Shown: piece after piece, positions 1 through 57,183 of the stretch
Layout of the letters: each line of letters begins with the position of its first letter
How positions within the stretch are numbered: position 1 is the first letter of the stretch
NCBI GenBank assembly: GCA_964247055.1
Contig: OZ176051.1
Coordinates: forward strand, 3,906,001-3,970,000
Length of the DNA stretch: 64,000 nt
DNA from: Paragordius varius
Lineage: Eukaryota > Animalia > Nematomorpha
Direction of reading: 5' to 3'
The notes under the pieces: model-generated
What the model was told of the DNA's origin: nothing
What the model saw: the letters and a program-made list of their open reading frames with translations, nothing else
The model's database searches: none
Translations under genes and position numbers: made by a program

Positions 1-590
1 TTGTATCAACATGATGTGTGGCAAAAAGCATAGCACTATATGCATAATCTAGCAACTAATGATACAATAATGAAAAAATTTACATCATCCTTGACATAGG
101 TTTTAAACAACAAAGTTTCCCAGGTTCTGTGAAACTTCAAGTTGGGTAAATTATAACTTTTAAGTGCAAAAATATTGTCACTTTCACTCGTCGGTTGATT
201 CATGTCCTCATTTATTTCATCCAAATTAGATCCATCAACGAACAGGCTATAGAGATGGAATTGGACTTCATTATTTTGTAGATCTAAAAACTATTTTATT
301 TATTTTTAAGCAATTTTACTGCCCCTTCTCCCCCATTCGGTTTATCAATGTTTACTGATATTATCTTATTTTGCAAATAATCATCATTAAATTGTTCAAA
401 CTTTAAATTACTTTCCACATAAAGCATCGAAAATGATTTCAAAAATTCAGTTAGTTTGTCCTTTATACGACCGTAATCAACATCGCTACATAAAATAAAT
501 TTATATAATTTACCAATCAGATAATTGAACCTCGATATGAAATGTATTTTTAGATAAATTAGACCGTTGACTAGAAGTAATTATATTCAT
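1..590 (-). CDS. TRIP13: Pachytene checkpoint protein 2 / TRIP13 AAA+ ATPase, 5' part (exons 590-514, 485-320, 290-84, 55-<1; continues off the window)
   Basis: Removing three GT-AG introns (513-486, 28 nt; 319-291, 29 nt; 83-56, 28 nt) gives an open frame: MNIITSSQRSNLSKNTFHIEVQLSDC...FLDLQNNEVQFHLYSLFVDG...DNIFALKSYNLPNLKFHRTWETLLFKTYVKDDLLDYAYSAMLFATHHVDT. This aligns by eye to human TRIP13 ENIIAANHWVLPAAEFHGLWDSLVYDVEVKSHLLDYVMTTLLF. Confidence 0.88.
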
Positions 591-7325: not shown

Positions 7326-7387
7326 GCTGATTTTATAAATATAACATATTTACAACAATTTTGAGTTATCAAATTATTTTGAAAAAT
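7326..7387. promoter_or_regulatory. 62-bp head-to-head (bidirectional) promoter between GTF2H2 and RanBP2
   Basis: The GTF2H2 ATG is at 7325 (-) and the reconstructed RanBP2 ATG at 7388 (+). The spacer is very AT-rich. Confidence 0.7.
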
Positions 7388-10300
7388 ATGGTTGTAGAAA
7401 ATACGATGAACCAGGAAATCGAAAAGTTAATAAATAGAGCTCCGAATTCCGAAAAAGTTTATCAATAATTAATTTAAGGATAAAAAATTACGTGGCTACA
7501 TAGTTGCGAAATTAGCATTTGAAAAATATGGTAAAATGGATGTTGCCAAAAAGTTATATTTGAATAATTTGCCAGATATTTGGACTTATATTTGGAAGAA
7601 AGACCACATAATATACCAGCATTGCTTTTAATGGGGGACATCCTATTTTCCCAAAAAAGTTATATGGACGCATACTTCCATTACACAAAGTATCCTCTCA
7701 TTTATATTTTAGAATTTACGATATTAACAGCTTACAAAAGGAGGTACTTTTGAAGAGTAAGATTTTTTATTTATATAATTAGTTTGTAATTGTTTGATCA
7801 AATGCCAAAATATGGACGAAGAAGAATCTAAAGTATAAAGGAAAAAAATAATATTTTTAGAAATGGTTAAATATAACCCAAGAATTTTATGGCAACAAAG
7901 ATGTAGTGCGCCAACTTAAAGTTTAATTTTCCTCTATAAATTTTAGCATAAAATCAATCTAAAATCATACAACAATTCATCTATAAACGGCCATATTCAA
8001 AGTATAACTCTTTTTTAATAACTTAGGTAATGTAAATGATGAAAATTTTTATGATACCCTTAATTCGAATACCTCTCCAATAAAATCCGAACCAGTTGAT
8101 AAAGAAAACTTTTATTCTCCACAAAGCCCGGCATATCATTCACCTATCCAAAGTCCCAATCCTCACAATTCTTTGTTTAGATTATCTAATTTACAAAAAG
8201 GTTTTAAAGGGAACATACATACATATATATATATATATATACCATTTCCCAGTCTAAATAAACGTTTTCCCAGTCAATCGAAACATTTTCCCAGTCAATA
8301 AAAATATTTTCCCAGTCAATCGAAACATTTTCCCAATCAATCGAAACGTTTTCCCAGTCATTCGAAACGTTTTCCCAGTCAATCGAAACATTTTCCCAGT
8401 CAATCGAAACGTTTTCCCAGTCAATCGAAACATTTTTCAGTCAATAACATTTTCCCAATCAATAAAAACGTTTTCCCAGTCAATAAAAACGGTTTTATTT
8501 TTGATGATAAATATCAAAACAAGAATATAAAAACAACTTTTAACCATTATTAGCGTAATATTAGGATATAATTTTATATAAAAACACAATTATTGAGTGA
8601 CAGTTTTTCCAAGTATATTCCAGTGGACAATCATTAATGACTTATTCTTTAGTTATATTTTTGGAATTTGAGTTAAGATAATGTTTTTTATTTTATCTAT
8701 GGTTCGCATTTATATTTGCGGCTAACTTAAAAAATCTATTACGGAGGAATTAATGAAATTTTTTAAAAATACACCATTTTTATCACAAAGGTCATTTAAC
8801 ACTTAATATTGGATCTTAAACATATATTTTACCCTAATTTTATAATATTTATCATTTGGTTCATCAAGGGCATAAGGCGGCCTTCCGAGTATCTTTGTGC
8901 GGTCGTGAAAAATTTGGAAATCCATATGCAAAAATATGCCCACAAAATCTCAGTAATATTCATATTTCTTACGCAATTATTATGAATGAATCTAATAAAT
9001 TGGTAATGAATCAAAAAAAATTGTTATATTGTGTTTGTATTTTACAGTCTTATAAAATTATGTGAATGCCCGTATATATTTCGAATGAAGAACCGTGTGC
9101 TTTTTGAGTTAAAATGCGGCCCGCGAAGGCATTTAGTTGGACACCCTTGTTTTAGTCAAATATCCTTTTTATTAAATATTAAATTAAAAACATTTTTATC
9201 AAAAAAAATTTTCGTTAAGATATTTTTTCCGACAGTATTTTAATCGACAAACCGGACATATTTAAAAACTATTTGAAGCGTTGCGCATATATTAATGCGA
9301 ACCATCGATAAAATAAAAAACATTATCTTAACTCAAATTCCAAAAATATAACATTTAAAGAATAAGTCATTAATGATTGTCCACTGGAATATACTTGGAA
9401 AAACTGTCACTCAATAATTGTGTTTTTATATAAAATTATATCCTAATATTACGCTAATAATGGTTAAAAGTTGTTTTTATATTCTTGTTTTGATATTTAT
9501 CATCAAAAATAAAACCGTTTTTATTGACTGGGAAAAAGTTTTTATTGATTGGGAAAATGTTTTTATTGACTGGGAAAATGTTTCGATTGACTGGGAAAAC
9601 GTTTCGATTGACTGGGAAAATGTTTCGAGTGACTGGGAAAACGTTTCGATTGATTGGGAAAATGTTTCAATTGACTGGGAAAACGTTTCGATTGACTGGG
9701 AAAATGACGTTTTCCCAAGCAATAAAAACGTTTTCCCAGTCAATAAAAACGTTTTCCCAGTCAATAAAAACGTTTTCCCAGTCAATAAAAACGGTTTTAT
9801 TTTTGATAATAATATCAAAACAAGATACAAAAATAACTTTTAATCATTATCAGCGTAATATTAGGATATAATTTTGCAAAAAAACACAATTATTTAATGA
9901 CAATTTTTCCCATATATTCCACAACACAATTTTTAACTTATCTTTGAAAGCTATATTTTATTAGCTGGATGAGTATTTGATGGTTTTAGAGATTTTTTTA
10001 AGAAAATTAATAGTTATTTTATTTTATCAATCGTTCGCATTAATATTCGGGGCTAACCTAAAATATCCAATGTTTCGGATTGAATTATAAATTTAAATGT
10101 ATTTTCAACTCTTTACAATCAAAAAGGAAACCTTCCAACTTTGTCCTTGATTAAAATACTGTTTTAAAAAATAATTTTACGATGAAAAAGTTGATTTTAA
10201 TGAAATATTGGATAAAATACAAATTAATAATATTATGTATGGCAAGTTTATGTTAATTTGAGATGTATAAGTATGAAATTTTAATGTTTAAGGGCTAACC

Positions 10301-13300
10301 TAAAACGCAAATGGTATATAATCTGATTACTTATATACAATGCAGCGATTAAATTTTAAATAACGAGTTGTTAACCTTTTCTGTGACAATCTGGTGTGCA
10401 ATATTGTAATTAAAAATATTATACCATTATTTTCTCGTCTGTTTGGATAAAAACTTTACGTTGATTATTTTGCATACATCAAGTTATCTATATAAGGTTC
10501 ATTTTATTTAGTAATATTTTATTAATATCAGAAACAGAAATCAAGAAAAAATTAGTTATATCTCAACAAGATAGAAAGCGATTAGTAAAACGAGTTTTTT
10601 TTGATGGAGAATGGACTGTGGATGTATCAAAGGATTTAGATATAAACTATAATACTGCTCGTCAAATTATGTATAAATATAAAAAAAACAATAGTTCAGA
10701 AATTCTAACTCGTGGAGGCACTAAAAACAAAAAAATTACGGAAGATATTATGCATTTCATAGATAATAAACTAACTTATCAGCCGTCATTAACAATTAAC
10801 CAGTTAAAAAATTTTTGGAAGATGAAAAATAAAATTATCTAAATCCTCTATAGACCGAGTAATCAAATCTTTAAAAATAACTTTGAAGTTAGCCCATCAT
10901 CTTAATGAAAAAGTCAATGATCCTCAAATAAAAGATTTAAGGAAAAAATACGCAATATGGTTTTCACAATCTTTCTCCGATGACTTAACAAATATTATTT
11001 ATTTGGATGAATGCGGTTATAATAACCATATTAGAAGAAGCCAAGGTCGATCCAAAAGTGGCACGAGAGCCAATATTGTGGTGTCTAGCGTAAAATGCAG
11101 AAACATCACTTTTATTGGAGCTCTGTCATTAAGAGGTATGGTTTATTACGAAATAGAAAGCCAAAGAACAGTCAATTCTCAACGCTTTACAAGTTTTTTT
11201 GATGGACTTTGTGAATATTTAAAGCGAGGCGATATTTAATATCATTTTATTATGGACAATGCACGGATTCACAAAAAAAATGAATTAAAAGGTAGAGCCG
11301 ATTTATACAAATACAAAATTGATTTTTTGTCCCCGTACAGTTATATGTTGAACCCAATCGAAATGGCATTTTCAATAATGAAAAATTTTGTCCGACAAAA
11401 TATTATATTAAACAATATGAATGCGAATGTGGAATTAGTGAATCTGATAAAATTGGCAGCGGGCTCCATAACATCGGAGGATAGCAGAAATTATTTTGAA
11501 AAGATAATGACAAATATGGTAAAGGCGGCAGCCGGTCTACCTTATATGTGATCTTTTTATAACATATACAATAAATGAAAACCATTTTTTAATATATTAT
11601 CTAAATTTGTCTCTTTAATAAAATCAAACAATGATTGATTTATTCAGGTATATTTGGTAATAGTTCAACTTTTTAAAAATAAGTCATTAAAGATTGTGTT
11701 GTGGAATATATGGGAAAAATTGTCATTAAATAATTGTGTTTTTTGCAAAATTTTATCCTAATACTAGCGTGAATCTCGTGCTGCTACGCAGCCCGAGGAA
11801 GTCCTTCGGACTTCTGGGGGGGGGGGGGGGGGTTCGAAGTTTGGATTTGAATGGGTCTACCGTTTTTCCTGTAGATCACAAAGCCAGCATTTTCCATTTT
11901 TATAAATATATAGATTACCATAAATAATGTTTTAATATCCATATATCTTTTAACATGCTATACATATGATAGATACTCCTTACTCAGCAGCTATCATCAA
12001 AGAAACGCTTGACTAAAATTTTTGCCTTTTAACAGGCCCTACGAAAAATCTTTCTCGAATTTTTACAGTCTCATACCGTGGACAAAAAAATACAATCAAA
12101 AAAATATTTTTGTGGACTTTGTTTTTTTTGAAAAAAATGGCTTTTACGGGGGGAGCGGGTAAAAAGAGGGCCTAAATCAAAAAAGTGACGCGACTATGTT
12201 CGGCGCAATCGAAAATAAGTAAACAAAATTGATATTTGAAATTGAATGGTCCAACACGTTCTCCGAAAAATTGACTTAACCCAGTTTTCACACGGGGTGG
12301 GCCCAAACTGGGGACCTAATTCCAAAAAAGGGCGAAGCTATTGTCGGGGCATTCATTAATGATTATATTTTTTCGATGTTTGGATTTGAATGGGTTCACC
12401 GGTTTTCCGGAAACAGATCACAAAGTTATATGAAAAATCAGTTTTTAGCGGCTAGCTCCTTACCCAGCAGCTATCATCAAATAAACGGTGGACTAAAATT
12501 TTTGCCTTTTAACAGGGAATACGTGGAATCTTTATTGAATTTTTAAGGTCTCATACCTAGGGCGAAAAATCGATTTAGAAAATTATTTTTGTGGACTTTG
12601 TTTTTTGAAAAAAATGGCATTTTACGGGGGGAGCGGGTAAAAAGAGGGTCTAAATCAAAAAAGTGGCTCGACTATGTTCGGCGCAATCGAAAATAAGTAA
12701 ACAAAAATCATATTTGAAATTGAATGGTCCAACACGTTCTCCGGAAAATTGTCTCAAAAACACGATTTTGTGGACTTCTGTTTTCAAAAAAAACCCGTTT
12801 TTCATACGGGGTGGGCCCGAACTGGGGGCCTATTTCAAAAAAAGGGCGAAGCTATTGTCGGGACATTTATTAATGATTATATTTTTTCGATATTTGGATT
12901 TGATTGGGTCTACCGGTTTTCCTGTACCAGATCACAAAGCCAGCATTTTCCATTTTTATAAATATATAGATGAGGATAAATAATGTATTAATATCCATAT
13001 ATCTTTTAACATGCTATACATATGATAGATACTCCTTACTCAGCAGCTATCATCAAAGAAACGCTTGACTAAAATTTTTGCCTTTTAACAGGCAATACGA
13101 AAAATCTTTCTCGAATTTTTACAGTCTCATACCGTGGACAAAAAAATACAATCAAAAAAATATTTTTGTGGACTTTGTTTTTTTTGAAAAAAATGGCTTT
13201 TACGGGGGGAGCGGGTAAAAAGAGGGCCTAAATCAAAAAAGTGACGCGACTATGTTCGGCGCAATCGAAAATAAGTAAACAAAATTGATATTTGAAATTG

Positions 13301-16300
13301 AATGGTCCAACACGTTCTCCGAAAAATTGACTTAACCCATTTTTCACATGGGGTGGGCCCAAACTGGGGACCTAATTCCAAAAAAGGGCGAAGCTATTGT
13401 CGGGGCATTCATTAATGATTATATTTTTTCGATGTTTGGATTTGAATGGGTTCACCGGTTTTCCGGAAACAGATCACAAAGTTATATGAAAAATCAGTTT
13501 TTAGCGGCTAGCTCCTTACCCAGCAGCTATCATCAAATAAACGGTGGACTAAAATTTTTGCCTTTTAACAGGGAATACGTGGAATCTTTATTGAATTTTT
13601 AAGGTCTCATACCTAGGGCGAAAAATCGATTTAGAAAATTATTTTTGTGGACTTTGTTTTTTGAAAAAAATGGCATTTTACGGGGGGAGCGGGTAAAAAG
13701 AGGGCCTAAATCAAAAAAGTGGCTCGACTATGTTCGGCGCAATCGAAAATAAGTAAACAAAAATCATATTTGAAATTGAATGGTCCAACACGTTCTCCGG
13801 AAAATTGTCTCAAAAACACGATTTTGTGGACTTCTGTTTTCAAAAAAAACCCGTTTTTCATACGGGGTGGGCCCGAACTGGGGGCCTATTTCAAAAAAAG
13901 GGCGAAGCTATTGTCGGGACATTTATTAATGATTATATTTTTTCGATATTTGGATTTGATTGGGTCTACCGGTTTTCCTGTACCAGATCACAAAGCCAGC
14001 ATTTTCCATTTTTATAAATATATAGATGAGGATAAATAATGTATTAATATCCATATATCTTTTAACATGCTATACATATGATAGATACTCCTTACTCAGC
14101 AGCTATCATCAAAGAAACGCTTGACTAAAATTTTTGCCTTTTAACAGGCAATACGAAAAATCTTTCTCGAATTTTTACAGTCTCATACCGTGGACAAAAA
14201 AATACAATCAAAAAAATAAAAAAGTGACGCGACTATGTTCGGCGCAATCGAAAATAAGTAAACAAAATTGATATTTGAAATTGAATGGTCCAACACGTTC
14301 TCCGAAAAATTGACTTAACCCAGTTTTCACACGGGGTGGGCCCAAACTGGGGACCTAATTCCAAAAAAGGGCGAAGCTATTGTCGGGGCATTCATTAATG
14401 ATTATATTTTTTCGATGTTTGGATTTGAATGGGTTCACCGGTTTTCCGGAAACAGATCACAAAGTTATATGAAAAATCAGTTTTTAGCGGCTAGCTCCTT
14501 ACCCAGCAGCTATCATCAAATAAACGGTGGACTAAAATTTTTGCCTTTTAACAGGGAATACGTGGAATCTTTATTGAATTTTTAAGGTCTCATACCTAGG
14601 GCGAAAAATCGATTTAGAAAATTATTTTTGTGGACTTTGTTTTTTGAAAAAAATGGCATTTTACGGGGGGAGCGGGTAAAAAGAGGGTCTAAATCAAAAA
14701 AGTGGCTCGACTATGTTCGGCGCAATCGAAAATAAGTAAACAAAAATCATATTTGAAATTGAATGGTCCAACACGTTCTCCGGAAAATTGTCTCAAAAAC
14801 ACGATTTTGTGGACTTCTGTTTTCAAAAAAAACCCGTTTTTCATACGGGGTGGGCCCGAACTGGGGGCCTATTTCAAAAAAAGGGCGAAGCTATTGTCGG
14901 GACATTTATTAATGATTATATTTTTTCGATATTTGGATTTGATTGGGTCTACCGGTTTTCCTGTACCAGATCACAAAGCCAGCATTTTCCATTTTTATAA
15001 ATATATAGATGAGGATAAATAATGTATTAATATCCATATATCTTTTAACATGCTATACATATGATAGATACTCCTTACTCAGCAGCTATCATCAAAGAAA
15101 CGCTTGACTAAAATTTTTGCCTTTTAACAGGCAATACGAAAAATCTTTCTCGAATTTTTACAGTCTCATACCGTGGACAAAAAAATACAATCAAAAAAAT
15201 ATTTTTGTGGACTTTGTTTTTTTTGAAAAAAATGGCTTTTACGGGGGGAGCGGGTAAAAAGAGGGCCTAAATCAAAAAAGTGACGCGACTATGTTCGGCG
15301 CAATCGAAAATAAGTAAACAAAATTGATATTTGAAATTGAATGGTCCAACACGTTCTCCGAAAAATTGACTTAACCCATTTTTCACATGGGGTGGGCCCA
15401 AACTGGGGACCTAATTCCAAAAAAGGGCGAAGCTATTGTCGGGGCATTCATTAATGATTATATTTTTTCGATGTTTGGATTTGAATGGGTTCACCGGTTT
15501 TCCGGAAACAGATCACAAAGTTATATGAAAAATCAGTTTTTAGCGGCTAGCTCCTTACCCAGCAGCTATCATCAAATAAACGGTGGACTAAAATTTTTGC
15601 CTTTTAACAGGGAATACGTGGAATCTTTATTGAATTTTTAAGGTCTCATACCTAGGGCGAAAAATCGATTTAGAAAATTATTTTTGTGGACTTTGTTTTT
15701 TGAAAAAAATGGCATTTTACGGGGGGAGCGGGTAAAAAGAGGGCCTAAATCAAAAAAGTGGCTCGACTATGTTCGGCGCAATCGAAAATAAGTAAACAAA
15801 AATCATATTTGAAATTGAATGGTCCAACACGTTCTCCGGAAAATTGTCTCAAAAACACGATTTTGTGGACTTCTGTTTTCAAAAAAAACCCGTTTTTCAT
15901 ACGGGGTGGGCCCGAACTGGGGGCCTATTTCAAAAAAAGGGCGAAGCTATTGTCGGGACATTTATTAATGATTATATTTTTTCGATATTTGGATTTGATT
16001 GGGTCTACCGGTTTTCCTGTACCAGATCACAAAGCCAGCATTTTCCATTTTTATAAATATATAGATGAGGATAAATAATGTATTAATATCCATATATCTT
16101 TTAACATGCTATACATATGATAGATACTCCTTACTCAGCAGCTATCATCAAAGAAACGCTTGACTAAAATTTTTGCCTTTTAACAGGCAATACGAAAAAT
16201 CTTTCTCGAATTTTTACAGTCTCATACCGTGGACAAAAAAATACAATCAAAAAAATATTTTTGTGGACTTTGTTTTTTTTGAAAAAAATGGCTTTTACGG

Positions 16301-19300
16301 GGGGAGCGGGTAAAAAGAGGGCCTAAATCAAAAAAGTGGCTCGACTATGTTCGGCGCAATCGAAAATAAGTAAACAAAAATCATATTTGAAATTGAATGG
16401 TCCAACACGTTCTCCGAAAAATTGACTTAACCCATTTTTCACACGGGGTGGGCCCAAACTGGGGACCTAATTCCAAAAAAGGGCGAAGCTATTGTCGGGG
16501 CATTCATTAATGATTATATTTTTTCGATGTTTGGATTTGAATGGGTTCACCGGTTTTCCGGAAACAGATCACAAAGTTATATGAAAAATCAGTTTTTAGC
16601 GGCTAGCTCCTTACCCAGCAGCTATCATCAAATAAACGGTGGACTAAAATTTTTGCCTTTTAACAGGGAATACGTGGAATCTTTATTGAATTTTTAAGGT
16701 CTCATACCTAGGGCGAAAAATCGATTTAGAAAATTATTTTTGTGGACTTTGTTTTTTGAAAAAAATGGCATTTTACGGGGGGAGCGGGTAAAAAGAGGGC
16801 CTAAATCAAAAAAGTGACGCGACTATGTTCGGCGCAATCGAAAATAAGTAAACAAAATTGATATTTGAAATTGAATGGTCCAACACGTTCTCCGAAAAAT
16901 TGACTTAACCCATTTTTCACACGGGGTGGGCCCAAACTGGGGACCTAATTCCAAAAAAGGGCGAAGCTATTGTCGGGGCATTCATTAATGATTATATTTT
17001 TTCGATGTTTGGATTTGAATGGGTTCACCGGTTTTCCGGAAACAGATCACAAAGTTATATGAAAAATCAGTTTTTAGCGGCTAGCTCCTTACCCAGCAGC
17101 TATCATCAAATAAACGGTGGACTAAAATTTTTGCCTTTTAACAGGGAATACGTGGAATCTTTATTGAATTTTTAAGGTCTCATACCTAGGGCGAAAAATC
17201 GATTTAGAAAATTATTTTTGTGGACTTTGTTTTTTGAAAAAAATGGCATTTTACGGGGGGAGCGGGTAAAAAGAGGGCCTAAATCAAAAAAGTGGCTCGA
17301 CTATGTTCGGCGCAATCGAAAATAAGTAAACAAAAATCATATTTGAAATTGAATGGTCCAACACGTTCTCCGGAAAATTGTCTCAAAAACACGATTTTGT
17401 GGACTTCTGTTTTCAAAAAAAACCCGTTTTTCATACGGGGTGGGCCCGAACTGGGGGCCTATTTCAAAAAAAGGGCGAAGCTATTGTCGGGACATTTATT
17501 AATGATTATATTTTTTCGATATTTGGATTTGATTGGGTCTACCGGTTTTCCTGTACCAGATCACAAAGCCAGCATTTTCCATTTTTATAAATATATAGAT
17601 GAGGATAAATAATGTATTAATATCCATATATCTTTTAACATGCTATACATATGATAGATACTCCTTACTCAGCAGCTATCATCAAAGAAACGCTTGACTA
17701 AAATTTTTGCCTTTTAACAGGCAATACGAAAAATCTTTCTCGAATTTTTACAGTCTCATACCGTGGACAAAAAAATACAATCAAAAAAATATTTTTGTGG
17801 ACTTTGTTTTTTTTGAAAAAAATGGCTTTTACGGGGGGAGCGGGTAAAAAGAGGGCCTAAATCAAAAAAGTGACGCGACTATGTTCGGCGCAATCGAAAA
17901 TAAGTAAACAAAATTGATATTTGAAATTGAATGGTCCAACACGTTCTCCGAAAAATTGACTTAACCCATTTTTCACATGGGGTGGGCCCAAACTGGGGAC
18001 CTAATTCCAAAAAAGGGCGAAGCTATTGTCGGGGCATTCATTAATGATTATATTTTTTCGATGTTTGGATTTGAATGGGTTCACCGGTTTTCCGGAAACA
18101 GATCACAAAGTTATATGAAAAATCAGTTTTTAGCGGCTAGCTCCTTACCCAGCAGCTATCATCAAATAAACGGTGGACTAAAATTTTTGCCTTTTAACAG
18201 GGAATACGTGGAATCTTTATTGAATTTTTAAGGTCTCATACCTAGGGCGAAAAATCGATTTAGAAAATTATTTTTGTGGACTTTGTTTTTTGAAAAAAAT
18301 GGCATTTTACGGGGGGAGCGGGTAAAAAGAGGGCCTAAATCAAAAAAGTGGCTCGACTATGTTCGGCGCAATCGAAAATAAGTAAACAAAAATCATATTT
18401 GAAATTGAATGGTCCAACACGTTCTCCGGAAAATTGTCTCAAAAACACGATTTTGTGGACTTCTGTTTTCAAAAAAAACCCGTTTTTCATACGGGGTGGG
18501 CCCGAACTGGGGGCCTATTTCAAAAAAAGGGCGAAGCTATTGTCGGGACATTTATTAATGATTATATTTTTTCGATATTTGGATTTGATTGGGTCTACCG
18601 GTTTTCCTGTACCAGATCACAAAGCCAGCATTTTCCATTTTTATAAATATATAGATTACGCTGATAATGATTAAAAGTTATTTTTGTATCTTGTTTTGAT
18701 ATTTATTATCAAAAATAAAACCGTTTTTATTGACTGGGAAAAGGTTTTTATTGCTTGGGAAAACGTTTTTATTGCTTGGGAAAACGTTTCAATTGACTGG
18801 GAAAACGTTTCAATTGACTGGGAAAACGTTTCGATTGACTGGGAAAACGTTTTGATTGACTGGGAAAACGTTTCGATTGACTGGGATAATGTTTCGATTG
18901 ACTGGGAAAACGTTTCCATTGACTGGGAAAATGTTTCGATTGACTGGGAAAACGTTTATTTAGACTGGGAAATGGTATATATATATATATATATATATAT
19001 CTCATATGATATTTATATTGGTATATTCTTTAAAAAATTATTTTTTTATTCCTATAAAAACATATGCTGACAATGACTCCTATATATACTTTGCCAGAGC
19101 GCTTTCTTTTCCTAATAGATTATTATTTAAAGTTCATATTTTAAACCTAACTAAATATTAAATTATGATGGCTTCTGTACGCTTTTTTAGACTTTTATCC
19201 GTCCAAAAAAATATTTCACAATTAATATAAAAAACGGTTTATTATATTACCTAAAATTTCCAATTTTTTGTAATTTAGATTCTTTTGCACAAAAAGAAGT

Positions 19301-22300
19301 ATCAAAAATAGTACCTAACACCCCGATACTCCCTGTGTTAAAAGGACCACCCCTCTTTAGAAATGACAGCAGTTTTCGTTCTTCAACTAATGCATTAAGC
19401 TCTCCAAAATTACCTTCATCATCAACTACATCCCTTTTAACCCGGGAAATTTTTAATTCAACTTTTGGAAATAATTCAAATTTCAAAGAACCGGAGTTTG
19501 CATCATCGAATGAAAAATCGATGATAGTATCGTCTGTTTTGAATTTAAATACCACTTCCCATTTTAGTACAACTGTACCAAAATCATTAGCAAATGAAAC
19601 TTTTAGTAATGGGGGAAACATTATAATTAATGTAATTACACCTAATCCTCAACAACAGCCATCTAACATCGATGGAAAACAATCGTCTGAGACGGATGTT
19701 TTAGATTCTAAAGAAACAATTGAAAAGACTAATGTAAAGACGGAAAAAACTTTACAACAAAGTTTGCTGATATCAACATTTGAAAAGTCTATCACAACTG
19801 CTATGCAAGAAATGACTCAACATATACAACGTCTCACGGAAAATTTTGAAAAAACGCTAACATCTAATACGGACATGATAAAAAGTATGGTTGAAACTAA
19901 CGCGAAAACACTCCAAACCCAATCCCAATTAACGGCTGCAGTTAAGGCTAATGATGAATTGCTCAAAGACATATTGGTAAAAAAATTATAAATTTTTATT
20001 AAGCTTTTTTAGGAGAAGATGTAAAGATTTACAAGCAATATAAAATTTATTTGGTTTTATAAACATGAGTGGACAATTATATATTGGCATAGGGGATAAT
20101 GTTATCCTTTTCAAGCGCATTTATTTAAATATCTAATTAAGTTTGAGATCAATTTTATTTGGTATAAGTTGATGTCTGTATATAATTAATAACATTTAAC
20201 TTTTGTTAAAGTTTTCATTATTTTTTATAATTTTAGGTTCAATTAAATAATTTGGCTTTATCGCAACAAAGTACACATGCCCAAATTGATATGTTACGTA
20301 CGCAGCCATTATCCCACAGATATTTTCCCAATAATTTAATGAATATGAATACAAATACACCCATCGATTATAATCAAATGCAACAATCCATGTTAATGTG
20401 GCAAAACCAACATTTTCAAACACCACAACCTTTACCTGGCCTTTATAACGCTAATTTACTCTATGATCAAGGTATATATAAAAATCCTGTGATGAACATA
20501 TCATAATATATATTTGATAAAATTTACATTATTTTAGATCGTTTGTCGAATTAATTGTTTAATAATGTAAAAATTTAAAAGTCTAATAGTTAATGTAATC
20601 TATGGGTACAAGCGGAGAACCGCTGCTTTTGACTATCTTTAAACAATTCAATACCAATACATATATATATTAAAATAAACTACGATAATTTAATATTAGA
20701 TAGTGTTTTTATGATTATATTCCGACTTTTAATTATATATATAGCAGATGAATTTTAAACAGTTTCAGGCCAAGATCATTTGAAAAAATAAATGCATATA
20801 TTTTAAATTATTTCAAAAATATGGTGTATAACAAATTCTCATATGGTGATTTTATGGTAAGGTATATAAGCCTTTTTTATATCACTTTATAGCAAATAAC
20901 TACCTTCCCAATAATATTAATAATGTTATATGGTCATCACATCTCAATGCTAACAAGAACAGTAGTAAGGATATAAACATTAGCAATATTCCTCCTAGTT
21001 TACCACAAACTACTATTAACATGATACCAGATTCTCAGTCTATCAAACATACATCTACCATAGATTTTAACTTTGGAAATACATCTGTACCAATTACCAC
21101 ATCATCTATGTCGAGTAGTACAAAAATCCTTACAAATAAAACCTCAAACAGTTCTCATCATAATAATAGCAAACTTTCTTTTGCTTATCCAAGCACAGGA
21201 GGTGGTTTTGCAGGATCTAAGTCAGCTGTTTTGACTCCGACTTTAAAGGGTTTATTTATATTTTGTTTTTTTTGGGATTTTAAAGTTCAGTTTTAAAAAC
21301 GGTTAAAATTGAATAATAACTGATTTGACTGCGTCCATGAATGTAGTTTCTGTCCTAATATTTATAATACCTTTTATCTGATAACTCGGAAATTTCATAT
21401 AAATTATATGGAATGTTTATTATATTAACCCCTGACCATAAGATAATGTCTTACCGTCGATATTCATTTTATATCAATTTGATTAATATATGTTGCAAAT
21501 TTTTTCTGGTTATTATTTAAAGCGGTCTCATCATTTTTACCGTTATTGTAAATTAATAATAATTTTTATTACTTTAAAATCAAAATGTTGAATATAGGGC
21601 ATAGTTTTAGCGAATCACACGATTTAGATGAGAATGATGTTGATGAATCCCTTCAACAACTTGAAGATGAACAATTATCATTGGCTAAATTACCTGCTTT
21701 TTCTTTCAAACCTTTCAATGAAATTAAGGTAAACTTTTTATTTTACGGATTAATTAAAATGTAGAATTTTAGGTTTTATACTAAAGTTTCGGTTTTCATT
21801 AATATTAGGTAATAAAATTATTGTTCTTCCTAAAAATTATACAGTGATCCAAACATTTAACTAAGCCTAGATTTTAACTCTGTGATTACAAACCATATAT
21901 ATTATATTTATAAATATTAATGCCCGTATTTTTAATCAAAAAATTTTATCCATTGAAAAATATTTATTATTTTTGTTTATATTTTTTTTGTATTTTTCCC
22001 TTTTCAATAGGTATCATCTCCGTCTGACCTTAAAACAACTACAAAATCTCAAGAAAAACCTCAACAGCTGATTTCTGTAGCGAAAACATTTAATTTAAAT
22101 AATTTTGAACAAATACAGAATCAAGATTTACAAAAAGTTCATTCTTCTGAAGAGTTGAATGAAAGTGATACGAGTGATGAATACAGCCAAACGTAATATG
22201 AAACAATTATTATTTTGTTTTGATTTTTATATCATTTTAAGAATTAAATTTTTAAATTTTAGTTATTATTTGCTATGTTTTTAAGTTTTATATAAACTGG

Positions 22301-24798
22301 ATTTGATTTTATGTAAAGTATGTTTTAAAATTATGGCATTAAAAAGCTTGTTTAAACATATTTATTTTTAACAATATCACACTTATCCTTTTTATTGGAT
22401 ACTTTGCTTATAACATTTTTATTTTAAAAAGCTTATCGATATTTTTTATCCTTAAAAATATATTTCTAAACTGTTTAAGTATCCAAAGGAGTATTTAATT
22501 ATATGCAATATCAAACGTTAACGAATTTATTTTTTTATCATTTCTCGAAAAATGTTTGATATCTGTACTTTTTTTTATTAATCCCCCAAAAATTAACAAA
22601 AATTTCTTAAACACTTTAGTTCTGAAACAACAACCAATGAAAGTAGTACTCCTGATGAGCAGACTCAACTTAACACGTCTAATCAAATATTTACTGCACC
22701 TATATTAAAACAACCAACCTGGTTTTGTGAGGTGTGTTATTGTGAAAATTCTTGTGATGCCAACAAGTGTCTTGCATGTGAAAGTGTTAGAAAAGTTATT
22801 GCTAATCCAGTTTCAAATCAATTTTCCGAACAACCTTTGGAAATGGCGATTCAAACTAATGATCACAAGACTGAATTTGACGAAAAAAATACTAGTCTCC
22901 TATCTAATAAAAGTTTATATTATGCGTTTAAGTTATATGAGCTTTATATATATCAGGGATTTTTATGCATGTTTCATTTATTTGGTGGTGTTACTCGTAA
23001 AAATTTGCTTTGTATTTAGTCATGAATGATTTTTTAATGTACTTTTCCAGTTTTGCTAAAACTATATTTTTCATTTAAATTTTTAATTTGATGTCAAATA
23101 AAATACCTTTTATTTCCAAATTTTTTGTTTGCAATAAATGTGAATAAGTATTTTTATTAAACGAATATCATATAGCTAAAATATTTGTTATCAAATTTTA
23201 CCTAAAATTAAACAATTATATACCTCTAAGTAACATTCAATTTTCGGTATATATATAGGTTTGGTGTCAGAAATGCCAAGCAAATTTTCTTTTGCATTTA
23301 CTTTGCCTGTACCGACGGTTAAAACACCACTTTCTGATAATAAAATATCATCGTTTTCGTTTGATTTACCATCTAAAGTTGAAAAAATAGCAAAATCCCC
23401 TTTGGAAACAAGCCATACTGTTGATGAGGTTGGTGAGGTATATAGTAAATTAAAAAAAACCTAAATTCTGAGATGAAAGATAAAAAGTAAAAGGCTTTTT
23501 TTGTAAAAAAAGCTATTTTATATAACCCATTATAGAAAATTTGAGTTCATTAATTTATATGCTTACTATCCCTTTTCGTAGCCCAAAACGATAGGTTTTA
23601 GAATATAAAACAAGGATTAAAAAATATTAGTTTTTTATTATTTATGTTTTGTCTTTTTTATATATTTTTTTATCGAGATATTGGATTTCCAAAATTTTAC
23701 AATTTTTTATAAAGACTTGTTGTAATTATATTTAAAAAACGCCTTATCTAGCATTTTTTCTAATTGAATCGAGATATTTGATTAAATAAAACCTTTCAAT
23801 AAAAATGTACATTTAATTCTTATGTTAACATTTTTTTTTCATTTTATATACATTTATTTAGGGAGAGGGAGATGAGAGTATAAATGATAATCCTGTTACC
23901 CCATCTAAAATGGAAAGGGAGGAAAAGGGTCAACATGTGCTATTTGCCGAACGTGCTAAATTATATAGGTTTTTTTCTTACCCATACAATATTTTACCTT
24001 TTTTTGTATTCAGATAAGAGTTAATTTTATCTATAATAATAAATTTTTATCATAATTTTTTTACTTCAGGGTATTGAGGCAATTTTTACTGTTTTTGTGT
24101 ACAATTAATGATTTTACTGGTCATTTTTTGAAATCACCTCCATGAAATTAGTTGAAATTTAATTTTATTTTGCTGGATTTTGTAAATTTTCTAATATAGT
24201 AAAGACAAATATTTTAGTTTTGATGTTTCTCCATAAATTAACTGCCTCTTTTTTTAATCCAATGTTGAAAATTATCTCAATAATTATAAGGTTATAGATT
24301 TTTTGAAAATGAATAATTGTAAAACTGATTTTTAGGTATAAGATTTATATAAATTGACTATGCATATAAATTTTTTTAAATTACCCCTATATAATTATTA
24401 AAATTTATGCAAACTCTATATAAAATACTGGTGAAAAACCTTGATGCTACTAAAATCATCAATTTTTTTGTTCAACCATATATAGATATGACACTGAAAC
24501 CAAAGAATGGAAAGAGCGTGGATTGGGTTTGCTTAAAATACTTCAAGAAATGCCGCCAACTGAAAAAGCGAATTCTGCCCACAAATTAGGTCCAAATGCC
24601 AAACCTGGCAAAAAACGTATAATTCTAAGGAGAGATCACATATATAAATTGGCCTGTAATCATTATATACCGAATCGTGCCAAACTCATACCATTTGGAA
24701 ACCATACTAATGTTAATTCATCAGAGGCACGTGATAAGACAAAAGATGAAGGTTTGATATCCAATTTTTTGAAATTAAATCTCATGGTTTGATATCTA

Positions 24799-24854
<56 letters not shown>

Positions 24855-25410
24855 TTTTTGTTGATAGATGATATGCCAATAAAAATTTGCTTTTAAAAAA
24901 TATTTTTTATGGAATTTGTTAAGAAAATTTAATTGGCTTATACATAAGCTAAAAATTCTCTTTTTATTTTAACCCAAACAATTTATTTTTTTATTCTTAT
25001 GGTCGCGTTTTTAACAAACCAAAATTTTATAAAAATAAAATTATCTTTATATTGAAACGTTTTTTTAAGTAGGTAGTTAAGATTTTTGTTAGCTATTCAA
25101 CAAACTAGATAAAACATTTGTTTTTGATAATATTACAGTAAAAATTATGTTTTAATTTACGATGTTTTAATTAGTAAAATATAAAAAAAGTTTTTTGTTA
25201 ATTTTTTTTTATTTTTTGTTATCTAGGAGTTACGCGTTACAGTTGGTATGCTTTAGATTTTGCACATCCTGATGCGCTAGAAGAAGGCAAAGATACTTCA
25301 AAGGGACGCAATGAATTTTTTACGGCTAAATTTAAAGTTTGTTTGAAAAAAAATTTGTTATTTATAAGAATTTTATAAATAAAAACTGTTTTAACATTTA
25401 TATAATTTGT

Positions 25411-25449
<39 letters not shown>

Positions 25450-28400
25450 TAGACTCCCCAAATAGCTCAGCAATTTAAGGATATTTTTGAGAATGATCTG
25501 GAAACAAAAGTATTATATAGTTCTTCGATAACCTTTATTTTGTTGGCGTTTAGAGTCAAATATTTTAAGTACTTTTAAACGACCAAATTATTAACGTGTT
25601 TAAAAAATATTTATTATAACAATTTATCTATATTACCTACTTTCTTTCGATGAGGATGTAATTATGTACAATTGAAACATTTTTTTGTCAACCGCGCATT
25701 CATTGTTTATTATCTACTTTTAATATATAAAAAAAATAATTAAACACACCAACATAAGATAAAACAGGACACACTCTATTTTTCAGATTTCGACCACCGA
25801 ATTTCAAGTTTTATTTTTTCAATAAACTTTATTTAATTATAAATTAATTAAGACTGTTAATTCTGATGAGGATGAAATTACCATTGTTTATGATAACATG
25901 CCAGCACCTGAGCTCGTTTCCAAAGCCCAATCGCTTAAAATGTCACCCTTCTTTTATTCATATTTGGAGAAAAAGGAACCTCACCATATATTATCATTTA
26001 CTCCTGACAACTCCAACGCAGCATTAAAAACAGGTATTAAAAAAAAATTTTTTGCTTTAAATTATGATTCGTTAGAATTTAAAAAGGAAAAGAATAAAAA
26101 GGAAAAGAGTAATTTATTGTACTAAGGCATATTTTTGATAAGGGTATTCTATAAATAGTGTCTGATATATTTTTTTCCGCCATATATAAGGGACCTGATT
26201 TTTAATAACGAGAGCCTATCGTAATAATGGATTGAAGGAATAGAAATATAAATTGGTAGCGCATTTGTCAGCATAAAAATTTAATATCAAAAGGTTTTAT
26301 ATGAAAAATATATCAACTTTTACTCAATTTAGACCTAATTTTCTAAACTAGTTTAGTTGAACACAGAAATGTTTTTACTAACATTTTTTATGTTGAATTT
26401 TAGAGACAAAATGTATGACTTGTGAATCTTTAGCTGATGAGAGTCATATTGATAATGTAAATAATGGGCTGTTAAAATCTGAAGGTGTTAAAAAAGAAAT
26501 TTTATCCACTGATAAAGAAATCACGCCAGAAAAGAATGGTAACATAATTTTTAATTTAAGACTATACTTTATTAAATATTACATAATAAATTTCTTTTTA
26601 TAAATAATATTTATATGTATCTGCATTTTTTAATAATAGAAACGATATCACCTATTACCGCTACGAATAAAATGATACACAGCGATAAAAATGGGTATCT
26701 AATTGACGTATCTACCCAAGAATACATTCTATTTGATGAACGAGCTAAAATATACAGGTTAATTTGTTTTTGAAAGTTAAAAAAGATTTTATAACCCATT
26801 AAATATCACGTAAAAATTTATTTTTTTAATAAATTTTTTTTGGTAAAAATTAAAATGTTGTCTAAATATTGTTTTGTTTTCTAAATATAGTTTATAATAT
26901 ATTTTAGCATACTGATATTTTTAATTTTTTGTGAAAGATAACTTATTTTTCAATTTATATGCGGATTAATAATATTTCATAAAACAAAATTGAAAAAAAA
27001 CTTAGGCCTAATCTATATAAATATGAAAATAAATTAAAAAACATGATTTAAAAAAATAAGAATTCTTTTATAATAGACGAATTGTAATTTGCGAATTTGA
27101 TGATTTTTAACGTTTTAAACCTTCTTATTTGTGATAATCCCATAACATTAAATTGATTTATTGATCAATTATATTTGATGATTTGATCGTTAGATTCGAT
27201 AGCGCAGAAAAAGCTTGGAAGGAGAGAGGCTTAGGTCAAATGTTAGTTTTGGCTCACCCAAGCATTCTTGCCCAAAATTCTCCTGCTGCTGATAATGAAG
27301 GTGAAATTTTGCGCAATATTGAAAGCACGCGATTACTATTTAGACGAGAACAGGTGCTTAAATTGGCATGTAATCATCGCATAGATTCTACACTTAAACT
27401 TGTCCCTGGTCCTATGACAGAAAATAAAAGTTACATTAATTTATAATTATATTAAATTTAATTAATGATGATATTTTGGTTTTTTACATAATAAATAACC
27501 CTTCTGACCGATGTAAATGCTGCATTTTATTATTACCACAAATATAAAATGTATGTTTAACTTAATTAAACAAAAGGGAATTTACATTTAATAGTTACCA
27601 AACAAAGGGGAATTTACATTAAATAGTTTCGGAAAGTTTAAAGCTTTTAACATTTATACAATACAATTATTTTATATTATTTTAAATCCCGCAATAAACA
27701 AGTGCTCTTGAAAGTTTTTTGACTCGATATTGTTTATAGTGACTAACGCGCCTATCCCATTTTTTTAATAATTAAACATAGTTACTAAGCCTTTTTATCA
27801 TAAACTTTTCCGATTTATAAATAAGGTTTTCTGGAAGTTATGTCCGCCCTTTATAAAAACGATTGCTATGGGTAAAAATACTGTATGTTAAATGAATAAT
27901 GAATGCTCTTTCATAATTTCTCAGATAAATTGAGTAATGATGGTCCGACCTCTTATACATGGCGAGCCTTAGATTTTAGCAGTGAAGATATTGTTGGGAC
28001 ATCCCTAACATTGGCAAATGGTATTGAAGAAAAATTTACAGTTCGCTTCAAGGTAAATATATATTTATTTAGTATATTTATTCATATTTTTTGTAATTTT
28101 CTTTTTATTTGCAATTTAGACCTCGGATCAAGCTAAACGCTTTTTTGATTGCGTTGAAGCTTGTAAGATTGGAAAGTATCCTAAGCCATTAACAACAAAA
28201 GGTAATTCATAAACTAATTTTTTGAAAATAAATATCAATTAAAGGCACTCCTTAAGATTAATTTTCTAAATATTTTAAACTATGGAAATACTCATAGATT
28301 TACCTCAAATTTTATCGGCCATAAAATCCCACAACACACCAGAAATAAAACCAGAACACGCTGAAACCAATGATGAAAATGATAAGGACACAATTAACAT

Positions 28401-40600: not shown

Positions 40601-40878
40601 TCATATATAAAAAAATAAGGGTAAATTAATGTCTTTGTATATAACCTTTTACTTTTTAAATTTTATTTTAGTAATCTTTATGAATACTCTAGAGAACAGA
40701 AGAACCATTCCTTGAAGCAGTCAAGGAAGTTTTAGGGGACCGGTATAATGCAAACATAGAAAACATTTATCGGATTGGATTGCATTTTATCTTAACGACT
40801 TTGCAACAGGGTTGTCAATCTGGTATCGAACAACAGCAACAGAAATCACAAAATACTTTGGATGTGCCCCCAAATTAA
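34625..40878 (+). CDS. N-terminally acylated globin (globin X-like), 3 exons: 34625-34905, 36840-37083, 40693-40878
   Basis: MGCSAS start (Gly2/Cys3), A-helix LLGKSWKAI, CD1 Phe (LLVLF), E7 His (LETHSEIV), F8 His (IGAYHC), and G/H helices EEPFLEAVKEVLGDRY. Introns lie at the phase-2 (B12.2) and phase-0 (G7.0) positions typical of globins. Confidence 0.92.
35160..35416. mobile_element. MITE (same family as 28610-28836) in globin intron 1
   Basis: TA|CCATTCACAA ... TTGTAAATGG|TA with CAATTCAAATTCACCC / GGGTGAATTTGAATTG subterminal repeats. Confidence 0.82.
38727..40571 (-). mobile_element. hAT (Buster/SPIN-like) transposon remnant in globin intron 2
   Basis: TIRs CAGTGGTACTCA / TGAGTATCACTG and an 8-bp TSD CTCTAAAT with central TA. 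Minus-strand transposase fragments include VLCTDECP and FPSTYRCEAAYSKMMYVKNTYRNGLTDDHMDDLL (hAT dimerisation domain). Confidence 0.9.
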
Positions 40879-56712: not shown

Positions 56713-56749
<37 letters not shown>

Positions 56750-57145
56750 TATTTGTGCGAAGATTATGATATAATATAGCCATTATTTAATTATATTTAG
56801 CCATGTACGATATCCATTTGTACAGTTGCACGGCTCATGATGGAAGCAATTTGCTTAATGTGGAACTATTGGATACTAATGGGTATTTATACGATTACCT
56901 GTTTTAAATTTATTTCTATTACATTTAAAAAATTTTCTAAATTCATATTTTTAGATGTCCAGTGCACTCTAAAATTGTAATGCCTCAAAAACGGGGTCTA
57001 ATAAGTACGGGAGAATTAGCAGCTATTTTACCATTTAACACCTTCAAATTCCCTGATGAACAAAACGTATTTTTCAAATGCGAGGTTCAGTTATGCTTCG
57101 AGAATTGTCAAGAGGTGATTTTTTAATAATACTGAAAAGTTTTGG

Positions 57146-57183
<38 letters not shown>

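What the first reader, a model, noticed from the sequence alone, without database searches (positions are those of the whole stretch)
7388..8200. Seven consecutive 22-28 nt introns at the 5' end of RanBP2, then only large introns: position-dependent intron size
Seen: introns 7457-7478 (22 nt), 7553-7575 (23), 7690-7712 (23), 7757-7782 (26), 7833-7860 (28), 7921-7946 (26) and 8002-8026 (25). Removing them restores an open frame homologous to the RanBP2 TPR. The next intron is 11,078 nt, and the ~25 later introns I could place are ~67-650 nt. Known: 20-30 nt introns occur in ciliates, nucleomorphs and dicyemids, but there they are typical genome-wide, and they are far below the usual minimum for animal spliceosomes. 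Inference: this genome has two intron regimes that switch ~650-800 nt after the start codon. This could reflect a cap- or promoter-proximal splicing mode able to excise micro-introns, or strong deletion bias and transposon exclusion in promoter-proximal chromatin. I know of no description of such a 5'-restricted micro-intron class.
Basis: partly seen in the sequence, partly recalled or inferred. Interest (0 to 1): 0.88.

Follow-up and report, generated by a model that had tools for sequence, protein, structure and literature searches.

The report
Tiny introns only at gene starts
In this hairworm-like animal the nuclear-pore gene RanBP2 starts with seven introns of only 22-28 bases and then has 26 introns of 67 bases or more, and a related hairworm shows the same short-then-long order at the same codons, so the pattern is inherited rather than chance.

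Summary
All seven GT-AG segments lie at the stated coordinates. Removing them gives a 213-residue N-terminus that aligns to the start of Gordionus RanBP2 (E 9e-43), and without gaps across junctions 1-6. The next intron is 11,078 nt, inflated by a foldback transposon and a satellite. The other 25 introns are 67-655 nt, with no hidden micro-intron.

The polarity is real and conserved:
- Gordionus has 41-51 nt introns at the same six codon positions, then introns of 118-4,650 nt.
- One position is shared with a beetle, where the intron is 144 nt.
- In the same window, RTF2 (25, 23, 30, 73, 600 nt) and TRIP13 (28, 29, 28 nt so far) repeat the pattern.
- Window-wide, 13 introns are 22-30 nt, 44 are at least 67 nt, and none lies between.
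- The short class has A before the GT (11/13). The long class has G (31/44).

- The switch point differs between genes.
- A globin gene has a 1,934-nt intron 281 nt after its start codon.
- A position-biased short-intron class is already published for the flatworm Gyrodactylus.
- No RNA evidence could be reached, and the mechanism is inferred.

This scan had already noted the same polarity on other DNA of this genome.

The parts
7326..7387 (.). 62-nt gap between the start codons of the divergent genes GTF2H2 (-) and RanBP2 (+). It holds a TATAAATA string at 7334-7341.
   Evidence: The TATA string is read from the sequence and is weak evidence in AT-rich DNA.
7388..8200 (+). RanBP2 exons 1-8: 7388-7456, 7479-7552, 7576-7689, 7713-7756, 7783-7832, 7861-7920, 7947-8001, 8027-8200. 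Together they encode the N-terminal TPR region.
   Evidence: (E 9e-43 to the Gordionus N-terminus)
7457..7478 (+). micro-intron 1, 22 nt, phase 0, CDS position 69
   Evidence: same column and phase as a 47-nt Gordionus intron
7553..7575 (+). micro-intron 2, 23 nt, phase 2, CDS position 143
   Evidence: same position as a 47-nt Gordionus intron
7690..7712 (+). micro-intron 3, 23 nt, phase 2, CDS position 257
   Evidence: same position as a 46-nt Gordionus intron
7757..7782 (+). micro-intron 4, 26 nt, phase 1, CDS position 301
   Evidence: same position as a 41-nt Gordionus intron and a 144-nt Agrilus intron
7833..7860 (+). micro-intron 5, 28 nt, phase 0, CDS position 351
   Evidence: same position as a 51-nt Gordionus intron
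7921..7946 (+). micro-intron 6, 26 nt, phase 0, CDS position 411
   Evidence: same position as a 51-nt Gordionus intron
8002..8026 (+). micro-intron 7, 25 nt, phase 1, CDS position 466. It has no counterpart in Gordionus.
   Evidence: needed to restore the frame; the alignment around the junction is gapped
8201..19278 (+). intron 8, 11,078 nt. About 298 nt would remain without the inserted repeats. It has no counterpart in Gordionus.
8219..18998 (.). Foldback-type transposon inside intron 8. Its arms, 8219-8436 and 18781-18998 (94% complementary), are built of 21-nt repeats. It contains a nested foldback copy (8443-8651 / 9356-9564, 99%) and a 1,056-nt satellite (11873-18624). It is flanked by (TA)n.
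19279..33050 (+). RanBP2 exons 9-34, with 25 introns of 67-655 nt. They encode one RanBP2-type zinc finger, three RanBDs and FG repeats. The stop codon ends at 33050.
41248..42820 (-). RTF2 gene. Introns: 42727-42751 (25), 42609-42631 (23), 42321-42350 (30), 42169-42241 (73), 41418-42017 (600).
   Evidence: Pfam Rtf2, E 7.6e-13
1..590 (-). 5' part of TRIP13. Micro-introns 486-513 (28), 291-319 (29) and probably 56-83 (28). The gene runs off the window.
   Evidence: TRIP13_N weak, E 0.0019
34625..40878 (+). Globin gene, the counter-example. Its first intron, 34906-36839, is 1,934 nt and lies only 281 nt after the ATG, at the B12.2 position (placement at that site recalled from memory).
   Evidence: Pfam Globin, E 2e-5

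Best explanation
These are ordinary, ancient GT-AG spliceosomal introns of the RanBP2/Nup358 gene of a hairworm-like animal. They have been compressed to the shortest length its splicing machinery tolerates (22-30 nt).

In hairworms the introns in the first ~0.5-0.8 kb of housekeeping genes sit at the lineage's length floor: about 25 nt here and about 47 nt in Gordionus. Later introns have a higher floor: at least 67 nt here and at least 118 nt in Gordionus RanBP2. Later introns also drift in size and take up repeats.

Shown: the introns, their orthology, the strict short-then-long order, the empty 31-66 nt gap, and a different base before the GT in the two classes.

Inferred: the cause is a position-dependent lower bound on intron length. 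Ultra-short introns are spliced by intron definition only while the transcript is still promoter- or cap-proximal, with a weakened U1-pairing 5' site (A at -1). Downstream introns need at least ~65 nt.
For: - Real introns: frame and homology.
- Six of the seven are orthologous to 41-51 nt introns annotated in the Gordionus record (XP_065313579.1 / GCA_954871325.2).
- One is shared with a beetle, where it is 144 nt.
- Order: 7 of 33 introns in RanBP2 (p = 2.3e-7), 3 of 5 in RTF2, and the first 3 in TRIP13.
- Two floors: 13 introns of 22-30 nt, 44 of at least 67 nt, none between. Eight of the long class cluster at 67-101 nt, as at a minimal-intron peak.
- Narrow, species-specific 5' sizes: 24.7 +/- 2.1 nt here against 47.2 +/- 3.7 nt in Gordionus.
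- Downstream orthologous introns vary freely, e.g. 67 vs 680 and 260 vs 4,650 nt; rho 0.39, not significant.
- Base -1 of the donor: A in 11/13 micro-introns against G in 31/44 long introns, Fisher p = 2e-5. Gordionus small introns lack this bias.
- No hidden micro-intron in 5,075 nt of downstream exons.
Against: - No RNA evidence for this gene could be reached.
- Only one 64-kb window and one orthologous locus were examined, so the genome-wide claim rests on unchecked scan notes.
- A minimal intron length is normally a property of the spliceosome, not of position in the transcript. No factor is known that would raise the floor downstream.
- Globin has a 1.9-kb intron at +281 and RTF2 a 73-nt intron at +579, so position does not dictate size.
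- The long-intron set was partly defined by my own gene finder, whose weight matrices could bias the -1 G count. That finder also makes false in-frame introns.
- The 62-nt promoter gap shows local compaction that a splicing model does not predict.
Confidence: 0.5

Rival explanations
1. No special splicing mode is involved. The same spliceosome can remove 22-30 nt introns anywhere. The polarity comes from a position-dependent balance of deletions and insertions. Near promoters, deletion bias and selection against insertions drive introns (and intergenic DNA) to the floor. Downstream, repeats and transposons keep introns long.
For: - Intron 8 is 97% inserted repeat.
- The gene starts are very compact: 62 nt between the GTF2H2 and RanBP2 ATGs, and ASNS and GTF2H2 have no introns at all.
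- Downstream orthologous introns differ up to 18-fold between the two species.
- The tissue-specific globin escapes the pattern, as expected if expression in the germ line matters.
Against: - None of the 44 long introns is below 67 nt, and eight pile up at 67-101 nt. That looks like a second hard floor, not drift.
- The two classes differ at donor base -1, which an indel model does not predict.
- Most downstream introns show no repeat within the window, although one window cannot detect genome-wide repeats.
Confidence: 0.3
2. This is a local consequence of exon size. The 5' end of RanBP2 is cut into very small exons (44-114 nt), which exon definition recognises poorly. Selection therefore keeps the introns between them short enough for intron definition. 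Larger downstream exons allow long introns.
For: - Internal 5' exons are much shorter than downstream ones (median ~60 vs 179 nt, Mann-Whitney p = 1.5e-4).
- The two smallest downstream introns (67 and 96 nt) flank the 82-nt exon.
Against: - Among downstream introns, length does not correlate with flanking exon size (rho 0.02).
- RTF2 micro-introns flank a 258-nt exon.
- The idea does not explain why small downstream exons get 67-116 nt introns rather than 25 nt.
Confidence: 0.1
3. The segments are not spliceosomal introns. They could be assembly or frameshift artefacts, segments retained in the mRNA of a decaying gene, or DNA removed from somatic cells.
For: No RNA evidence was obtained here.
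Against: - Seven of seven have GT-AG ends and AT-rich interiors.
- Removal is exact to the base across conserved residues.
- Six sit at positions where Gordionus has annotated introns.
- The rest of the gene is intact over 1,903 codons.
Confidence: 0.03

Closest known systems
Bimodal, position-biased intron lengths of the monogenean flatworm Gyrodactylus salaris (Hahn et al. 2014, PMC4040987); tapeworms are also bimodal
   Same: Two discrete length modes. The short mode dominates the first ordinal intron positions and the longer mode takes over later. The class (short or long) is conserved between related species. The genome is AT-rich and parasitic.
   Different: The modes are ~32 and ~58 bp there, against 22-30 nt and at least 67 nt here. 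The bias there concerns positions 1-2 and is statistical; here up to seven consecutive introns are short with no interleaving. It is a different phylum, so the origin is independent. No mechanism is known in either.
Ultra-short introns of myxobolid myxozoans and Dicyema japonicum (Hadjez et al. 2026, PMC13644364)
   Same: GT-AG introns of 20-30 nt in an animal, at positions conserved with other animals, with reduced splice-site motifs. Short introns tend to neighbour short introns. The lineages are parasitic.
   Different: There they are the genome-wide median intron. Here they are a minority class confined to gene starts, in a repeat-rich genome that also has kb-sized introns. That paper found such introns only in those two groups among 51 genomes, and its text never mentions Nematomorpha.
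Orthologous RanBP2 of Gordionus sp. m RMFG-2023 (XP_065313579.1, locus L001)
   Same: The same six 5' intron positions and phases. The same short-then-long order. Several downstream positions are also shared.
   Different: The short class is 41-51 nt, not 22-28. There is no A bias at donor -1. Window introns 7 and 8 are absent. Downstream introns are longer (118-4,650 nt).
Schistosoma mansoni 5'-small / 3'-large intron skew (Berriman et al. 2009; recalled from memory, paper not held)
   Same: Smaller introns towards the 5' end of genes, the reverse of the usual animal pattern.
   Different: As I recall it, the small class there is about 30 bp or more and the pattern is a trend. I could not check the text.
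Tiny introns of ciliates and nucleomorphs (own knowledge)
   Same: Length range of 15-30 nt, with 3n lengths avoided.
   Different: They are genome-wide, occur in unicellular lineages and show no positional restriction.

Membership tests
U2-type GT-AG spliceosomal introns | GT at the 5' end and AG at the 3' end | tested here: met
   7/7 in RanBP2, 3/3 in RTF2, 3/3 in TRIP13
U2-type GT-AG spliceosomal introns | Exact removal restores a continuous reading frame homologous to orthologs | tested here: met
   E 9e-43 to Gordionus. The alignment is ungapped across junctions 1-6 and gapped near junction 7.
U2-type GT-AG spliceosomal introns | Position and phase shared with introns of relatives | tested here: met
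   6/7 shared with Gordionus; intron 4 also shared with Agrilus
U2-type GT-AG spliceosomal introns | Absent from mature mRNA | not testable with these tools
   No transcript-derived protein or contig of this species could be reached.
U2-type GT-AG spliceosomal introns | Branch-point adenosine upstream of the AG | tested here: inconclusive
   TAAT/ATAAT-like strings lie 6-13 nt before the AG in all seven, read by eye. Such strings are expected anyway in 80% AT sequence.
RanBP2 / Nup358 | N-terminal TPR region homologous to RanBP2 | tested here: met
   (hits named E3 SUMO-protein ligase RanBP2)
RanBP2 / Nup358 | Several Ran-binding domains, RanBP2-type zinc finger(s), FG repeats | tested here: met
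   Three RanBDs, one zinc finger (Pfam match weak) and FG-rich exons
RanBP2 / Nup358 | C-terminal cyclophilin domain and IR1-M SUMO E3 region (vertebrate form) | tested here: not met
   The model ends after RanBD3 at 33050 and no cyclophilin-like exon was seen. Gordionus also ends there. These parts are not universal in invertebrates (own knowledge).
Position-biased bimodal intron classes (flatworm type) | Two discrete length modes | tested here: met
   13 introns of 22-30 nt, 44 of at least 67 nt, none between, in this window only
Position-biased bimodal intron classes (flatworm type) | Short mode enriched at the first ordinal positions | tested here: met
   RanBP2 ranks 1-7 of 33, RTF2 ranks 1-3 of 5, TRIP13 ranks 1-3
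Position-biased bimodal intron classes (flatworm type) | Holds genome-wide | not testable with these tools
   Only one window was readable. Other windows are known only from unchecked scan notes.
Genome-wide ultra-short-intron genomes (dicyemid / myxobolid type) | The median or typical intron is below 30 nt | tested here: not met
   44 of 57 curated introns in the window are at least 67 nt.

The most novel reading that the evidence does not exclude
Hairworms have a promoter- or cap-proximal way of splicing that removes introns of 22-30 nt, with its own 5' splice-site preference (A instead of G before the GT). This route is not available further down the transcript, where introns must be at least ~65 nt. 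That would mean the minimal intron length of an animal spliceosome depends on where in the transcript the intron lies.
Probability: 0.3. Interest if true: 0.85.

Novelty: new variant of a known kind. Interest (0 to 1): 0.65.

Why it matters
Introns under 30 nt were published in 2026 as occurring in only two animal groups, and genome-wide in both. Here they form a sharply bounded class at gene starts in a third, unrelated, repeat-rich lineage. A sister genus keeps the same order with a different floor.

That gives a natural experiment on what sets minimal intron length. It offers two floors in one genome, orthologous introns at 25, 47 and 144 nt, and a splice-site difference between the classes.

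There is also a practical consequence. Gene finders with a minimum intron of about 40 nt will break the 5' ends of many hairworm genes. If so, this could contribute to apparent gene loss and low BUSCO scores reported for this phylum.

Tried and rejected
- Exact look-up of the neighbouring GTF2H2 protein found no record.
- Searches with the Gordionus N-terminus (residues 1-200, then region 1-500) found no other hairworm RanBP2 and no transcript-derived fragment. I therefore have no RNA evidence and no third hairworm.
- The GTF2H2 search gave only ~35% identical animal homologs and no Gordionus ortholog among the 120 listed, so it gave no second Gordionus gene.
- Potamilus and Limulus RanBP2 loci were too long to fetch, and one Limulus isoform was not on record.
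- Rfam and tRNA scans of the window found nothing.
- A permissive open-frame scan for micro-introns gave hundreds of chance hits and was dropped.
- My dynamic-programming gene finder:
  - Without splice matrices it skipped the short 5' exons and strung satellite ORFs together.
  - With matrices it made three doubtful calls that I removed by hand: a 108-nt cut through RanBD1, a 21-nt exon with a 45-nt intron, and an 87-nt GC-rich exon.
  - It skipped the conserved exon 3 and invented in-frame introns in the intronless ASNS and GTF2H2. I do not count it as evidence on its own.
- The 5' end of the cuticlin-like gene could not be found, so that gene says nothing about polarity. Its apparent 52-nt intron is more likely ~72 nt, using a GTATGT donor.
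- Berriman et al. 2009 could not be read, and four literature searches for the Schistosoma skew failed.
- The idea that the long introns are merely micro-introns inflated by transposons was rejected for all but intron 8. Even without its insert, intron 8 would be ~298 nt.
Full report
**What is in the sequence**

Each starts with GT and ends with AG. They are 22-28 nt long, none is a multiple of three, and each is 74-88% A+T. Read without splicing, all three frames between 7388 and 8200 are broken by stops. With the seven segments removed, one frame is open from the ATG at 7388 to 8200.

To test homology without typing sequence, I searched a RanBD exon of the same gene (27195-27428) against 1.84 billion cluster representatives. 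This returned 150 long multi-RanBD proteins. In a script, the spliced 213-residue N-terminus matched the extreme N-termini of 34 of them.

- The best match is P0005, residues 4-184, E 9e-43, running across all seven junctions.
- The others align over residues ~15-140.
- P0005 is XP_065313579.1 of Gordionus sp. m RMFG-2023, a horsehair worm.
- Other hits are named E3 SUMO-protein ligase RanBP2, from a thrips, two bivalves, a beetle, Limulus and sharks.

Junctions 1-6 lie in ungapped conserved alignment. Junction 7 lies in a gapped stretch and rests on the frame plus homology on both sides.

**The rest of the gene**

I built a small gene finder using codon log-odds, splice-site matrices, a minimum intron of 18 nt and dynamic programming. 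I curated its output against tblastn hits of P0005 and against the three internal RanBD copies.

RanBP2 runs from 7388 to 33050. It has 34 exons, 33 introns and 1,903 codons, with one zinc finger, three RanBDs and FG-rich exons.

- Introns 1-7 are 22-28 nt.
- Intron 8 is 11,078 nt.
- Introns 9-33 are 67-655 nt.

I removed three doubtful calls by hand (see Tried and rejected). A separate scan of 5,075 nt of downstream exon for AT-rich GT-AG segments that score like the true micro-introns found one marginal candidate. It would break the frame. There is therefore no micro-intron after the seventh.

The chance that the seven shortest of 33 introns occupy ranks 1-7 is 2.3e-7.

**Intron 8 is a transposon insertion**

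Positions 8219-8436 and 18781-18998 are inverted arms, 94% complementary, built of 21-nt repeats. Between them lie a second, nested foldback copy and a satellite of 1,056-nt units. The whole element sits in a (TA)n tract. Without it the intron would be about 298 nt: still long-class, but not extraordinary.

**The pattern is inherited**

The Gordionus gene lies on OX940783.2 (GCA_954871325.2), and I fetched it as L001. An exact protein-to-genome mapping gives 22 introns.

- The first six are 47, 47, 46, 41, 51 and 51 nt.
- The rest are 118-4,650 nt.

In a protein alignment these six fall in the same columns and phases as window introns 1-6. At least seven downstream introns are shared as well. 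Their lengths (window vs Gordionus) are 260 vs 4,650, 436 vs 2,565, 67 vs 680, 96 vs 302, 294 vs 931, 422 vs 1,129 and 565 vs 700. Window introns 7 and 8 have no Gordionus counterpart.

In the beetle Agrilus planipennis (L002) the second intron (144 nt) is at the column and phase of window intron 4. The first intron (645 nt) is one codon away from window intron 1.

Three conclusions follow:

- The micro-introns are old introns that shrank.
- The short-then-long order predates the split of the two hairworm lineages.
- Each lineage has its own narrow 5' size: 24.7 +/- 2.1 nt here and 47.2 +/- 3.7 nt in Gordionus.

The beetle shows the usual animal pattern of a long first intron.

**Other genes in the window**

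Earlier notes of this scan pointed me to two of them.

- RTF2 (42820 to 41248, minus strand; Pfam Rtf2, E 7.6e-13) was modelled by the finder with introns of 25, 23, 30, 73 and 600 nt, in that order.
- TRIP13 (from 590, minus strand, running off the window) begins with introns of 28, 29 and probably 28 nt.
- ASNS (677 codons, starting MCGI) and GTF2H2 (454 codons) have no introns.
- The globin gene (ATG at 34625) has a 1,934-nt intron only 281 nt after its start. I place it at the conserved B12.2 site from memory of globin gene structure.
- The start of the cuticlin-like ZP gene could not be found. Its 15 curated introns are 72-549 nt.

Pooled over the curated models, 13 introns are 22-30 nt and 44 are at least 67 nt. 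None lies between, and eight of the long class fall at 67-101 nt.

**A difference between the classes**

The last exon base before the GT is A in 11 of 13 micro-introns. It is G in 31 of 44 long introns, where A occurs in only 8 (Fisher p = 2e-5). At the orthologous Gordionus sites this base is G, G, A, A, G, T. The A therefore goes with the 22-30 nt class, not with the position.

One caution applies.

**How it most likely works**

Shown: real introns, orthology, strict order within genes, two discrete size classes, and a splice-site difference.

Inferred: why. Two readings compete.

1. A position-dependent lower bound. Introns of 22-30 nt can be spliced, or are tolerated, only in the promoter- or cap-proximal part of the transcript. 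Further down the floor is about 65 nt.
   - For it: the empty gap, the pile-up of downstream introns just above 67 nt although their lengths otherwise drift freely between species, and the -1 A.
2. A position-dependent balance of deletion and insertion, with no special splicing.
   - For it: the transposon in intron 8, the extreme compaction at gene starts (62 nt between the GTF2H2 and RanBP2 start codons), and the escape of the tissue-specific globin.

A third idea is that tiny 5' exons force intron definition. It fits RanBP2, where 5' internal exons of 44-114 nt compare with a downstream median of 179 nt (p = 1.5e-4). It does not fit RTF2, and it is not supported by the lack of correlation downstream.

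The descriptive part (real introns with a real, conserved polarity) I hold at about 0.9.

Neither of the first two readings predicts a fixed switch distance. The data agree: the switch falls between +470 and +579 in RTF2, between +614 and +813 in RanBP2, and beyond +507 in TRIP13.

**Comparison with what is known**

- Hadjez et al. 2026 (PMC13644364) state that introns under 30 bp are known in animals only from myxobolid myxozoans and Dicyema, among 51 genomes. In both they are the genome-wide norm. No 5' bias is reported in the passages my term searches returned, and Nematomorpha is not mentioned.
- Hahn et al. 2014 (PMC4040987) describe two modes, ~32 and ~58 bp, in Gyrodactylus salaris. The short mode dominates ordinal positions 1-2 and the long mode positions 3 and above. 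Class membership is conserved with Echinococcus.
- The Schistosoma mansoni skew I know only from memory. The paper is not held.
- The Gordionus genome preprint does not contain the word intron, and no held paper links Nematomorpha genomes with intron size.

I therefore file this as a new variant of a known kind. It is a position-biased short-intron class, as in flatworms. It arose independently, with a floor as low as in dicyemids and myxozoans, and with a much sharper boundary.

**Earlier scan notes**

This scan had already recorded the micro-introns and their 5' polarity on other DNA of the same genome. One follow-up named blood flukes as the parallel. I used those notes as leads only.

New here:
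- the RanBP2 gene model;
- the base-exact orthology of six micro-introns with 41-51 nt Gordionus introns, and of one with a beetle intron;
- the conserved polarity in Gordionus;
- the transposon explanation of the 11-kb intron;
- the globin counter-example;
- the empty length gap;
- the -1 A/G difference;
- the Gyrodactylus citation.

Noticed in passing
window 8219-18998: Foldback-type transposon inside RanBP2 intron 8. It has 218-nt inverted arms made of 21-nt repeats (unit TTTCCCAGTCAATCGAAACAT), a nested second copy (8443-8651 / 9356-9564, 99%) and a 1,056-nt (478+578) satellite with repeated ORFs that have no Pfam match. It is inserted in a (TA)n tract.
   Followed up: partly
window 7326-7387: Only 62 nt separate the start codons of the divergent genes GTF2H2 and RanBP2. 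A TATAAATA string lies at 7334-7341. The 5' UTRs must be very short or overlap the neighbouring gene.
   Followed up: no
window 650-2683 (-) and 5961-7325 (-): Asparagine synthetase (677 codons) and GTF2H2 (454 codons) are completely intronless, next to a gene with 33 introns. GTF2H2 is only ~35% identical to its best homologs, and no Gordionus ortholog appeared among the 120 hits listed.
   Followed up: partly
donor sites of the 13 micro-introns and 44 long introns in the window: The last exon base before the GT is A in 11/13 micro-introns but G in 31/44 long introns (Fisher p = 2e-5). The orthologous 41-51 nt Gordionus introns do not show the A bias.
   Followed up: partly
window 34625-40878 (+): Globin gene whose product starts MGCSAS, which looks like an N-terminal acylation motif as in globin X (recalled from memory). 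Its introns are 1.9 kb and about 3.5 kb. The boundaries of the second intron were not refined.
   Followed up: partly
window ~49995-57905 (+): GC-richer (40-47%) cuticlin-like ZP-domain gene. It has a long Gly/Pro/Gln-rich repetitive N-terminal part and a C-terminal membrane anchor. Its 5' end was not found in the 6 kb upstream.
   Followed up: partly
window 23862-25509 versus L001: The window's RanBP2 has three RanBDs, but the annotated Gordionus protein aligns to only two. The first RanBD region is gapped in the alignment. Either it was lost in Gordionus or exons are missing from that annotation.
   Followed up: no
window 28590-28706, 35127-35249, 62407-62523: A short dispersed repeat (21-nt unit ACAATTCAAATTCACCCTAAA, read as QFKFTLK in one frame) recurs in introns of RanBP2 and globin and near the window's end. 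It may be a small mobile element.
   Followed up: no
window 30708-30866 and 44637-44756: Two GC-rich (37-45%) open stretches share an RRVLKP-like motif. The first was wrongly taken as a RanBP2 exon by my gene finder. They may be copies of a repeat.
   Followed up: no
window 58929-63271 (-): Unverified gene model of unknown function (240-codon ORF at 60379-61098, no Pfam match). Its predicted first intron is 34 nt, 39 nt after the ATG, followed by introns of 677, 68, 489 and 251 nt.
   Followed up: no
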